A DNA stretch of 63,466 nucleotides, counting the filler, from Octopus bimaculoides (Eukaryota), in NCBI RefSeq assembly GCF_001194135.2. It is 7 parts of 6 records of this genome, joined end to end, with 100 filler letters (N's around TTAATTAATTAA, not from the genome) between each part and the next. Parts side by side here need not be neighbours in the genome. Positions count along the whole stretch, not along the records: positions 23,703 to 52,937 come from NC_069004.1; 6 more parts are not named here. One strand, 5' to 3'. Positions 49,302-50,476 of the stretch are shown here, piece by piece. Made by a program: the position numbers and the translations under genes. Every line of letters starts with the position of its first letter. The stretch's first letter is position 1. Below the pieces are notes generated by a model. That model saw only the letters and a program-made list of their open reading frames with translations, ran no database searches and was not told the DNA's origin.

Positions 49302-49832
49302 ATAAAGAGAAAGGAGACAGAAAGACAGATAAACAGAAAGAGAAAACAGAGAGAGGGAGAGAGGGAGAGAGCCATGAAAAGAGAAAAGAGAAAAGGAGGG
49401 AAAGACATAAAGAGAGAGAGTAGGAGGCAGACAGACAGTAAGAGAGAGGAAGACGCTGATGTCTTAATGTTTAAAAATATCAAAGTTTTTCAGACATTAT
49501 TTTCCCTGCACTTAAGTTTTCTGCGTAAAGTTAGATTTAACGTCTGCGTTCGGTACAATTCCTTCAAGACAGAGGGAAGAACTCGTGTGATTTCCAAGAA
49601 AGAAATATGTATAAATGATGCAGTGCTTTTAGTGTTAAAGCACGAACGATTTTTTTTTTTTTTTAATTTAAAGAAAAAAAACGATGTAAAAATATACACG
49701 AATATTCCAAGTTAATTTAAAAGAAAAGGGAAAAGAAAAAAATGATATCGATTAATAGCAGTAAAAATAATAATCTCTTCTCTCGTGAATTCATAACCAC
49801 AAACTTGATCATTCTATTACTANNNNNNNNNN

Positions 49833-50476
49833 AAACTGCAAAAGCCGAAAAGGCCGAAAAAACTGCAAAAGCCGACAAGGCCGAAAAAACTGCAAAGGCT
49901 AAAAAAACCGAAAAAGCTGTAAAAGCCGAAAAGGCGGAAAAGGCTGCGAAAACCAAAAAGGCTGCGAAAACCAAAAAGGCTGAAAAAACTGCAAAAGCCG
50001 AAAAGGCCGAAAAAGCTGCAGAAGCTAAAATGGTCGAAAAAAATGCAAAAGCCGCAAAGGCCGAAAAATCTGCAAAAACCGCAAAGGCCGGAAAAGCTGC
50101 AAAAACCGAAAAGCAGAAAGCCAAAGATGAACCAAACGATGAATCTCTGAAAAATAATGACGGTAGAATCATCGGCTGTTTCAAAATCACCAATTCACGA
50201 AGACTGAAAAAAGATATGAACCTTCAACTAGTTGTATTGAATAAATCGCAAAAAAGCTGTATGTTTCGATGTCGCCTTTACGGCTTAAAATATGCCGTGG
50301 TGTATAATGGAAAGGTTTGCTTTTGCGGAAGTAATAAACCCCCGACCAAGAAAGCTATTAAAAGCATCGACTGTTCGAAAATATGCAGCGGAAAGAAGTC
50401 GAAATGCCACCAAAAGAATACCGTACGGATATATGAAACTATGACGCCAGTTTCGAAGGTAGGGAAAACGAAGTGA
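49833..50476 (+). CDS. Partial CDS: Ala/Lys/Glu (AEK, KAEK) repeat region followed by a WSC domain
   Basis: Open frame from the 10-N gap to TGA; WSC pattern IGCF..C-x3-C..KYAVVYNG..CFCG..C-x3-CSG..C..RIYET with 8 Cys at about 50168-50440; start hidden by the gap; possible donor aag|gtaggg at 50459. Confidence 0.8.

What the first reader, a model, noticed from the sequence alone, without database searches (positions are those of the whole stretch)
49742..50476. Unusual protein: histone-H1/TolA-like AEK/KAK repeat array fused to a lysine-rich WSC domain
Seen: about 100 aa of TAKAEKAEK-type repeats, built from 9/18/27-nt units such as gccgaaaag, followed by a complete 8-Cys WSC pattern that is itself strongly K/R-rich. 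Established: WSC domains are extracellular, putatively glycan-binding modules (yeast Wsc1, Kremen, polycystin-1, WSCD1/2), usually with Ser/Thr-rich stalks or enzyme domains. A polycationic Ala/Lys helical repeat partner is not an architecture I recognise. Inference: a lineage-specific secreted protein that binds anionic glycans or microbes (mucus, egg, cuticle, adhesive or antimicrobial role). The pre-gap LIILLL could be a signal peptide core, or the end of an intron (…ttacta|g). A donor at 50459 may add more exons.
Basis: partly seen in the sequence, partly recalled or inferred. Interest (0 to 1): 0.7.

Follow-up and report, generated by a model that had tools for sequence, protein, structure and literature searches.

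The report
Unannotated octopus lysine-rich WSC-domain ORF
An intact but unannotated reading frame in the Octopus bimaculoides genome joins a lysine/alanine repeat, predicted to form one long helix, to an unusually basic WSC (sugar-binding type) domain; it is probably a lineage-restricted extracellular protein, but neither expression nor the start of the protein can be shown here.

Summary
After the 10-N gap, one frame stays open for 213 codons. It encodes 31 (A/T)-x-K triads (27-nt tandem array, 49833-50125), a short acidic linker, and a WSC domain (Pfam PF01822, E 9e-11, 42 bits against a cut-off of 27.8) with all eight family-invariant cysteines. An AlphaFold model matches yeast Wsc1 and Kremen WSC domains best.

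The window is Octopus bimaculoides chromosome CM046624.1. The ORF lies in TE-rich intergenic DNA 6.4 kb upstream of a tepsin-like gene, in divergent orientation. It is not an annotated protein. Nothing in a library representing 15 billion proteins is more than 42% identical, and none of the 150 best WSC relatives carries a comparable repeat.

No usable splice acceptor separates repeat and domain, so they would be translated together. The domain's net charge is +19, against a homologue mean of 0.5 (sd 4.7).

The gap cannot be closed. The N-terminus (M…LIILLL), a signal peptide or anchor, and phase continuity all remain undecided. The donor at 50459 is a chance-level match.

Best reading: a lineage-restricted, probably extracellular, polycationic WSC protein that binds anionic glycans. 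The function is inference only. Rivals are an unexpressed relic or one exon of a larger gene. This is a new variant of a known kind, of moderate interest.

The parts
49610..49616 (+). TATAAAT, a possible TATA box about 130 nt upstream of the ATG (weak, unverified)
   Evidence: Read directly. The flank is AT-rich, so a chance occurrence is likely. No promoter test for animals was available.
49742..49822 (+). Pre-gap ORF segment MISINSSKNNNLFSREFITTNLIILLL: candidate start codon (A at -3), 21 polar residues with K8 and R15, then a hydrophobic run cut off by the gap. It could be a signal peptide or a type II signal anchor.
   Evidence: It is the only open frame in the last ~80 nt before the gap, with an in-frame stop at 49718-49720. 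Pfam finds nothing in it. An open run of 34 codons has roughly a 10% chance per frame at this base composition (own estimate).
49823..49832 (.). Assembly gap (10 N, true length unknown). It abuts the tandem array, so more repeat units and the end of the hydrophobic segment are probably hidden here.
   Evidence: The array starts at the first base after the gap. Other gaps of the piece keep the same length in GCA_001194135.2.
49833..50125 (+). Coding tandem repeat: 27-nt units of three 9-nt triads, read as TAKAEKAEK-type. At least 97 residues, net charge +21, predicted as a single long alpha-helix.
   Evidence: TRF. Codon table and composition: position 1 is A/G in 98% of codons, position 2 is A/C in 96%, position 3 uses all four bases. 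11 of 14 acidic residues have K/R at i+4. AlphaFold gives a helix over residues 2-84 with pLDDT of about 88-92 through residue 70, falling to 75 in the last decade.
50126..50164 (+). Short acidic linker DEPNDESLKNNDG (net -4)
   Evidence: Low-confidence, non-helical segment in the model; pLDDT is below 50 for residues 85-101.
50165..50443 (+). WSC domain (RIIGCF...VRIYETM). Eight Cys at post-gap residues 115, 142, 146, 162, 164, 180, 184 and 191. Net charge +19. The CGG motif is replaced by CHQ.
   Evidence: Pfam PF01822, E 9.4e-11. PDB sequence hits to Wsc1 7pz2 and Kremen1. Alignment A1. Model pLDDT 81-93 for most of the domain. Foldseek top hits are 7pz2, 5fwu and 9n3u. Charge and aromatic counts.
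50444..50476 (+). C-terminal tail TPVSKVGKTK and TGA stop
50459..50460 (+). Donor-like GT (AAG|GTAGGG, phase 0), a possible alternative to the stop five codons later
   Evidence: 7 of 9 matches to MAG|GTRAGT, but such sites occur about 2 per kb in the piece. No further domain-coding ORF lies in the 2.4 kb downstream.
50485..50490 (+). ATTAAA 9 nt after the stop, a possible poly(A) signal. A second one (AATAAA, 50573-50578) lies inside a SINE fragment.
   Evidence: Read. SINE core copy at 50556-50594. Chance occurrence in AT-rich DNA is not excluded.

Best explanation
The ORF is an intact, unannotated and lineage-restricted protein-coding exon of Octopus bimaculoides. It may be a whole single-exon gene.

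Protein layout, in order:
- an N-terminal hydrophobic segment, cut by the assembly gap, that would act as a signal peptide or type II anchor;
- a stiff, uniformly cationic Ala/Lys/Glu helix about 12 nm or longer, built from (A/T)-x-K triads in which each Glu can pair with a Lys four residues on;
- a short acidic hinge;
- a compact WSC domain held by four disulfides, whose surface is unusually rich in Lys and Arg.

Shown here: the repeat and the WSC domain are real, lie in one frame and have no splice acceptor between them. The domain keeps every invariant family residue except the first Gly of the CGG motif. It has no close relative anywhere.

Inferred: the protein works outside the cell as a binder of polyanionic glycans or surfaces, such as sulfated mucins or glycosaminoglycans, or microbial walls. 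The WSC head would supply carbohydrate recognition. The polycationic rod would supply reach and electrostatic avidity.
For: Domain identity: Pfam WSC above its gathering score. All eight Cys, G114, G150 and Y200 are conserved. The predicted fold matches Wsc1 and Kremen WSC best, then PAN/apple domains.

Long independent history with constraint: the best relatives are only 23-42% identical, and the best single-domain score is 49.9 bits. This holds although the collection includes the O. bimaculoides, O. vulgaris and Argonauta proteomes. The frame is nevertheless open for 213 codons.

Lysine richness sits at the protein level. In the WSC part, A is 44% and 39% at codon positions 1 and 2 but 31% at position 3, which equals the genome background.

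The repeat keeps frame through 31 triads. It uses all four Ala codons and both Lys codons.

No AG between the gap and the first Cys has more than 38% pyrimidines upstream, so repeat and domain form one exon.

From PMC9024836: WSC domains are extracellular modules with four disulfides.

Other strongly basic WSC domains exist: P0131 at +15 and P0144 at +14.
Against: - The ORF is not annotated and has no self-hit in the protein collection.
- No expression data were available.
- No ortholog appears in the annotated octopod proteomes.
- The N-terminus is cut by the gap, so no signal peptide can be demonstrated.
- The conserved CGG motif, described as a structural determinant of WSC domains, is CHQ here.
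- The codon-position test on the repeat is not significant: 15, 12 and 22 mismatches, p = 0.2.
- The surroundings are simple repeats, SINEs and RT fragments.
- AlphaFold's confident helix lies in a region with no aligned homologues. Sequences with this much net positive charge can be disordered until they bind a polyanion.
- The ligand is pure inference.
Confidence: 0.45

Rival explanations
1. Unexpressed relic. An orphan WSC exon sits next to a purine-rich minisatellite that happens to be open and in phase. It is not a functioning gene, or it was inactivated very recently.
For: - Not annotated; no self-hit or ortholog in the protein collection.
- A long (AAG)51 tract and AG-rich low complexity lie directly upstream, and the repeat itself is 50% A. 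Local microsatellite-type expansion is therefore plausible.
- The codon-position bias in the repeat is not significant.
- CGG is replaced by CHQ.
- The flanks are TE-rich.
- Only 45 of 810 single-base changes in the repeat would create a stop, so its openness is cheap to maintain.
Against: - A neutral copy old enough to have no parent above 42% identity should have lost cysteines or gained stops. All eight Cys and the other near-invariant residues are kept.
- 116 non-repeat codons are open, with a chance of roughly 4e-4 at this composition (own estimate).
- The A excess is at codon positions 1 and 2, not 3.
Confidence: 0.27
2. One exon of a larger gene. Further exons lie upstream (beyond or inside the gap) or downstream through the donor at 50459. 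The 'repeat + single WSC' architecture would then be incomplete. Examples are a membrane-anchored or multi-domain protein.
For: - A donor-like site in phase 0 lies just after the domain.
- Nearly all of the best-scoring relatives carry several WSC stretches, and some carry other domains such as a GH16-type beta-glucan-binding part.
- The N-terminus is unresolved.
- Introns of the neighbouring genes run to kilobases.
Against: - No second WSC or other domain-coding ORF occurs anywhere in the 29-kb piece on the + strand.
- The donor match is at chance level.
- An ATG with a good context, an in-frame upstream stop, a stop codon and an ATTAAA all sit close around the ORF.
- No annotated protein contains this exon.
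Confidence: 0.22
3. Intracellular chromatin or nucleic-acid binding protein of the histone H1 / bacterial Lys-Ala repeat type.
For: The composition of the repeat (36% K, 33% A) and a pI of about 10 for the whole protein.
Against: - An eight-Cys, four-disulfide WSC domain is an extracellular module.
- There is no H1 globular domain and no significant match to any H1, TolA or other family.
- Glu is placed regularly with Lys at i+4, which differs from the Pro/Ser-containing motifs of H1 tails (own knowledge).
Confidence: 0.03

Closest known systems
WSC (cell-wall integrity and stress response component) domain family, Pfam PF01822: yeast Wsc1-3, Kremen1/2, WSCD1/2, polycystin-1, fungal WSC lectins and oxidase-linked WSC modules
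   Same: The eight-Cys pattern (by homology C1-C6, C2-C4, C3-C5, C7-C8). The GC(F/Y), YA-V, CxCG and (I/V)Y motifs. A predicted PAN/apple-like fold whose best structural matches are Wsc1 7pz2 and Kremen1.
   Different: - A single domain, where nearly all of the best-scoring relatives carry several.
- Net charge +19 against about 0.
- 7 aromatic residues against a homologue mean of 9.1.
- The aromatic three residues before the first Cys (Tyr in 16 of 31 homologues; by my own register, Wsc1 Tyr24) is Ile.
- CGG is CHQ.
- The partner is a cationic helical repeat, not a Ser/Thr-rich stalk, kringle/CUB, enzyme or TM region.
Invertebrate multi-WSC proteins, e.g. hemipteran WSC + beta-1,3-glucan-binding-like (GH16-type) proteins (Homalodisca XP_046665345, Macrosteles XP_054269533, Halyomorpha XP_024218353)
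   Same: They are among the best single-domain sequence matches, at 45-46 bits and about 30% identity. They are animal extracellular WSC proteins.
   Different: They have 3-6 WSC domains plus a catalytic or recognition domain, near-neutral charge and no Lys/Ala repeat.
Lys/Ala-rich polyanion-binding repeats: histone H1 C-terminal tail, mycobacterial HBHA heparin-binding tail, TolA domain II (comparison from own knowledge)
   Same: Very high Lys and Ala content, low complexity, strong positive charge and helix propensity. In HBHA and H1 such tails bind sulfated glycans or DNA.
   Different: - No sequence-family relationship was detectable.
- Strict three-residue periodicity with Lys every third residue.
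- Regular Glu with Lys at i+4.
- No Pro.
- Attached to a disulfide-rich extracellular domain.
ER/K single alpha-helix (SAH) domains of myosins and caldesmon (own knowledge)
   Same: One long isolated helix is predicted, stabilised by i to i+4 Glu-Lys pairs. It could plausibly act as a rigid spacer.
   Different: SAH domains are nearly charge-balanced and Glu-rich. This one is Ala-rich, with 35 Lys to 13 Glu, and would be extracellular.
Yeast Wsc1 sensor design (WSC head on a stiff stalk above the membrane)
   Same: If the N-terminal hydrophobic segment is an uncleaved anchor, the layout of membrane, rigid rod and WSC head would mimic the Wsc1 head-on-stalk design. The WSC head is described in PMC9024836.
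   Different: The topology is inverted (type II, with the head at the C-terminus). The rod is a helix rather than an O-mannosylated Ser/Thr region. No cytoplasmic signalling tail is evident. The anchor is unproven.

Membership tests
WSC domain (Pfam PF01822 / SMART WSC) | Profile match above the curated gathering score | tested here: met
   42.2 bits against a cut-off of 27.8, E 9.4e-11, covering profile positions 2-79 of 82. 525 relatives at E<=1e-3 in the representative search.
WSC domain (Pfam PF01822 / SMART WSC) | Eight conserved cysteines (four disulfides) | tested here: met
   All eight Cys columns are invariant in 32 sequences, and the ORF has all of them. The disulfide pattern is taken from PMC9024836. 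The bonds themselves are not testable here.
WSC domain (Pfam PF01822 / SMART WSC) | PAN/apple-like fold with a long L5 loop | tested here: met
   AlphaFold model, pLDDT 81-93 for most of the domain. Foldseek top hits are Wsc1 7pz2 (E 2.4e-4, TM 0.62 normalised to the target), Kremen1 and glyoxal-oxidase WSC, followed by PAN/apple domains. This is a prediction, not an experiment.
WSC domain (Pfam PF01822 / SMART WSC) | Conserved CGG motif after the eighth Cys | tested here: not met
   The ORF has C-H-Q. 30 of 31 aligned homologues have G at the first position, and 18 of 31 have G at the second. One homologue (Nematostella P0074) also lacks it, so it is near-invariant rather than absolute.
WSC domain (Pfam PF01822 / SMART WSC) | Extracellular location (signal peptide or membrane topology) | tested here: inconclusive
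   The only candidate is M...FITTNLIILLL, and it is cut by the gap at 49823. No signal-peptide predictor was available.
WSC domain (Pfam PF01822 / SMART WSC) | Carbohydrate or protein ligand binding through surface aromatic clusters | not testable with these tools
   The core aromatic positions F116, Y153, F163 and Y200 are kept. The position three residues before the first Cys (Tyr in 16 of 31 homologues) is Ile. Total aromatics are 7 against a mean of 9.1.
Histone H1 / TolA / other named Lys-Ala repeat families | Significant match to a family profile or to a solved member | tested here: not met
   Pfam gives only sub-threshold compositional hits, such as Plasmodium_HRP at 19.9 bits against a cut-off of 45.8. 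NCBIfam gives nothing near its cut-offs. The best PDB match has E 0.063, to a low-complexity eS6 extension.
ER/K single alpha-helix | Long isolated helix with dense i to i+4 Glu-Lys pairs and near-neutral charge | tested here: inconclusive
   A helix over residues 2-84 is predicted, and 11 of 14 acidic residues have K/R at i+4. However, the net charge is +21 and Glu is only 13%. Helicity is not measurable here.

The most novel reading that the evidence does not exclude
An octopus-lineage gene born by in-frame expansion of a purine-rich 9/27-nt repeat onto an old WSC exon. This would create a new type of animal lectin: a polycationic helical rod 12 nm or longer, secreted or type II-anchored, carrying a basic WSC head that recognises sulfated or otherwise anionic glycans. 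In layout it would be a convergent, inverted counterpart of the fungal Wsc1 head-on-stalk design.
Probability: 0.15. Interest if true: 0.6.

Novelty: new variant of a known kind. Interest (0 to 1): 0.42.

Why it matters
If it is expressed, this would be an unannotated cephalopod gene with a domain architecture absent from the 150 best-scoring WSC relatives examined. It would be a case study in how coding tandem repeats graft new physical properties (charge, length, stiffness) onto an old glycan-binding module. It would also be a candidate for octopus mucus, egg-coat, skin or immune biology.

It also illustrates a practical point. Short single-exon ORFs that abut assembly gaps and low-complexity DNA are missed by annotation pipelines. 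If it is not expressed, it is simply one more orphan exon in a repeat-rich intergenic region.

Tried and rejected
- **Word-index protein searches.** The full ORF was swamped by low complexity and gave one irrelevant hit. The WSC part alone found nothing.
- **Exact look-up.** The product starting at the internal Met is not on record.
- **Closing the gap through the chromosome-scale assembly.** The fetched locus (L001) is 100% identical to the window but ends at 42791, and it keeps the same N-gaps. No annotated gene near the ORF could be used as a handle.
- **Translating six frames by DNA reference for Pfam.** ORFs were extracted by script instead.
- **A second WSC exon in the piece.** None was found by tblastn.
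- **Terminal inverted repeats or TE boundaries around the ORF.** Nothing convincing was found. A retrogene origin is rejected because no close parent exists.
- **ORF inside a tepsin intron.** Rejected: tepsin exon 1 maps to 43186-43257, so the ORF lies 6.4 kb upstream of that gene.
- **Codon-position test for selection on the repeat.** The trend is in the expected direction but is not significant.
- **Literature searches** for WSC in cephalopods or molluscs, or for lysine-rich WSC proteins, found nothing relevant.
- **Bacterial-type promoter and terminator scans** were not used because they do not apply to an animal genome.

Full report
**What is in the sequence.** The ORF at 49742..50476 (+) is present as described. 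A 10-N assembly gap at 49823-49832 interrupts it.

Downstream of the gap only one frame is open; the other two meet stops within about 90 nt (read). That frame runs for 213 codons to TGA at 50474-50476.

It begins with a tandem array. TRF reports periods of 27 and 54 nt over 49833-50113, about 10.7 copies, with scores of 247-289. As protein this is 31 consecutive triads of (A/T)-(A/E/K)-K, with Lys in the third place in 29 of 31. The 97 residues contain 35 K, 32 A, 13 E and 9 T, for a net charge of +21.

A 13-residue acidic linker follows (DEPNDESLKNNDG). After it come a 93-residue cysteine-rich domain and a 10-residue tail.

**The domain is a WSC domain.**
- Pfam PF01822 matches with E 9.4e-11 and 42.2 bits, against a gathering score of 27.8, over profile positions 2-79 of 82.
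- A sequence search of the PDB finds the yeast Wsc1 sensor domain (7pz2, E 1.7e-4) and Kremen1.
- I aligned the ORF with 31 WSC domains taken from an exhaustive HMMER search. The eight Cys columns are the only invariant ones, and the ORF has all eight. It also has the near-invariant G114, G150 and Y200.
- The one clear departure is the CGG motif after the last Cys, which is CHQ here. Thirty of 31 homologues have Gly at the first position. The Wsc1 structure paper describes CGG as a determinant of the long L5 loop (PMC9024836).
- An AlphaFold2 model built on that alignment has mean pLDDT 79.9. Most of the WSC part scores 81-93.
- The model's best Foldseek matches in the PDB are Wsc1 (E 2.4e-4, TM 0.62 on the target), four Kremen1 entries and a WSC-bearing glyoxal oxidase. 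PAN/apple domains follow.

**What is unusual about it.**
- The WSC domain has net charge +19, against a homologue mean of 0.5 with sd 4.7.
- Two homologues of unknown origin are also strongly basic: P0131 at +15 and P0144 at +14. Basic WSC domains are therefore rare but not unique.
- The lysine richness is not a by-product of A-rich DNA. In the WSC part A is 44% and 39% at codon positions 1 and 2, but 31% at position 3, the same as the genome background of 32%.
- In the repeat, codon position 1 is A/G in 98% of codons and position 2 is A/C in 96%. Position 3 uses all four bases, with four Ala codons and both Lys codons in use.
- A formal count of mismatches to the 27-nt consensus gives 15, 12 and 22 at the three positions. 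This trends the right way but is not significant (p = 0.2).
- Eleven of 14 acidic residues have Lys or Arg at i+4.
- AlphaFold predicts one uninterrupted helix over residues 2-84. pLDDT is about 88-92 through residue 70 and falls to 75 in the last decade. At 1.5 Å per residue that is about 12 nm (my calculation). No homologues were aligned over this region, and highly charged low-complexity sequences may be disordered until bound, so the helix remains a prediction.
- No family model or solved protein matches the repeat significantly. 'H1-like' and 'TolA-like' describe composition only.

**Where it is.**
- Three exons on the + strand at 28.3-31.2 kb are 138/138 identical to Octopus bimaculoides D-erythrulose/L-xylulose reductase.
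- Window 23703-42791 is 100% identical to GCA_001194135.2 chromosome CM046624.1, with N-gaps of the same lengths.
- On the minus strand, from 33705 to about 43260, lies a 546-residue gene with ENTH and tVHS-like domains, i.e. tepsin-like. Its first coding exon (MLMKATSDDDKPIPGYLYDE) is at 43186-43257.
- The WSC ORF is therefore intergenic. It lies 6.4 kb upstream of that gene and is oriented divergently from it.
- On the 5' side, moving towards the ORF, are a tRNA-Sec gene, SINE copies, (AAG)51 and an AG-rich tract. On the 3' side are a (TG)n tract, a 5'-truncated SINE core and a reverse-transcriptase fragment.

**Is it a gene?**

*Points in favour.*
- The domain has no relative above 42% identity, and no single-domain score above 49.9 bits, in a library of one representative per 50% cluster drawn from 15 billion proteins.
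- That library contains the O. bimaculoides, O. vulgaris and Argonauta proteomes.
- Despite this divergence the domain keeps every invariant residue and an open frame. A recent dead copy would have a close parent. An old dead copy would have decayed.
- No AG between the gap and the first Cys has more than 38% pyrimidines in the upstream 20 nt. If the WSC domain is made at all, the repeat is therefore translated with it.
- An ATG with A at -3, an in-frame stop 7 codons upstream, a TATAAAT about 130 nt upstream and an ATTAAA 9 nt after the stop would fit a compact single-exon gene. All of these are weak signals in AT-rich DNA.

*Points against.*
- The ORF is not annotated, and no protein in the collection contains this exon.
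- There are no transcript data and no annotated octopod ortholog.
- The neighbourhood is repeat-rich.
- CGG is lost.
- The repeat is cheap to keep open: only 45 of 810 single-base changes would give a stop.

**The gap and the ends.**
- Upstream of the gap only the ATG frame is open. It reads MISINSSKNNNLFSREFITTNLIILLL and breaks off inside a hydrophobic run.
- This segment could be the h-region of a signal peptide. The 21-residue polar start with K8 and R15 could instead fit a type II signal anchor.
- It could also be non-coding. An open run of 34 codons has roughly a 10% chance per frame (own estimate).
- The nominal 10 N keep the two open frames in phase, but the gap length is a placeholder.
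- The array starts at the first base after the gap. The gap most likely reflects unresolved repeat units, so the true array may be longer.
- The donor-like AAG|GTAGGG at 50459 is in phase 0. Matches this good occur about twice per kb.
- Nothing domain-like follows in the remaining 2.4 kb.

**How it most likely works (inference).** WSC domains are extracellular modules with four disulfides. They act in protein-carbohydrate or protein-protein recognition (PMC9024836). Among the best-scoring animal relatives are hemipteran proteins that combine WSC domains with a beta-1,3-glucan-binding-like part.

Here the usual aromatic-rich, near-neutral surface is replaced by a lysine-rich one. Aromatic residues number 7 against a mean of 9.1. 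The Tyr usually found three residues before the first Cys is Ile. The domain also hangs on a long polycationic segment.

The simplest reading is an extracellular binder of polyanionic glycans or surfaces. The head would give specificity. The rod would give reach and electrostatic avidity, whether the protein is free or anchored by its N-terminus.

I give about 0.65 that repeat and WSC domain are, or recently were, a translated unit. I give about 0.45 to the whole statement including extracellular polyanion binding.

**Comparison and verdict.**
- It passes the WSC membership tests that could be run (profile, cysteines, predicted fold). It fails one near-invariant motif (CGG). Topology is undecided.
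- None of the 150 best relatives has a region with more than 50% A+K+E in any 40-residue window, whereas the repeat here is 82% A+K+E overall. The architecture is new among those examined.
- It is a new variant of a known kind and an unannotated locus. Its interest is moderate and depends on expression.

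Noticed in passing
window 47229-47315 (+): A selenocysteine tRNA gene: Rfam RF01852 at 74.8 bits (gathering score 47), and ARAGORN gives anticodon TCA. A TATATATA lies about 25-30 nt upstream and a T-run follows the gene, as expected for the type 3 Pol III promoter of tRNA-Sec genes (own knowledge). It lies 2.4 kb upstream of the WSC ORF.
   Followed up: partly
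window ~28349-31189 (+) and 33705-~43260 (-): The two neighbouring genes are O. bimaculoides D-erythrulose/L-xylulose reductase (DCXR-type SDR; 138/138 identical over three exons) and a tepsin-like gene with ENTH and tVHS-like domains, arranged tail to tail. From memory, human DCXR and TEPSIN both lie on 17q25.3, so this may be old conserved linkage; I did not test that.
   Followed up: partly
window 51695-51847, 51949-52094, 50556-50594, 47539-47634 / 48549-48644: Several copies of a tRNA-derived SINE. Two heads are 82% identical, and the conserved core reads GGGTCGAT-AAATAAGTACCAGT. One 5'-truncated core lies about 80 nt after the ORF's stop and contains the AATAAA at 50573-50578. An inverted pair of copies lies 1-2 kb upstream. 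Translated SINE fragments (…GDVNTPTSVV…) recur across the piece.
   Followed up: partly
window 50884-51495 (-), 36108-36428 (+), 29716-29955 (-): Fragments of non-LTR retrotransposon ORF2: zf-RVT (E 4e-5) and RVT_1 (E 4e-6 and 3e-7). The first is interrupted by another 10-N gap at 50915-50924. The other two lie inside introns of the tepsin-like and DCXR genes.
   Followed up: partly
window 49133-49450: A perfect (AAG)51 microsatellite is followed by AG-rich low complexity, about 290 nt upstream of the ATG. It has the same purine-rich strand bias as the coding repeat, which hints that the coding array arose in a locally expansion-prone region.
   Followed up: no
proteins P0131 (ENA contig, 241 aa) and P0144 (JGI/IMG, 401 aa): Two WSC proteins from unidentified organisms in environmental data also have strongly basic WSC domains (net +15 and +14), but no Lys/Ala repeat. 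Cationic WSC domains may form a small, unrecognised functional subclass.
   Followed up: no
window 25094-25793, 27238-27669, 31883-31932, 32612-32621, 43596-43727, 46296-46626, 50915-50924: There are seven further assembly gaps in the 29-kb piece. Sequence either side of the gap at 31883-31932 is duplicated: 383 nt (31500-31882 = 31933-32315) at 100% identity. This suggests an assembly artefact or a tandem duplication at that gap.
   Followed up: no
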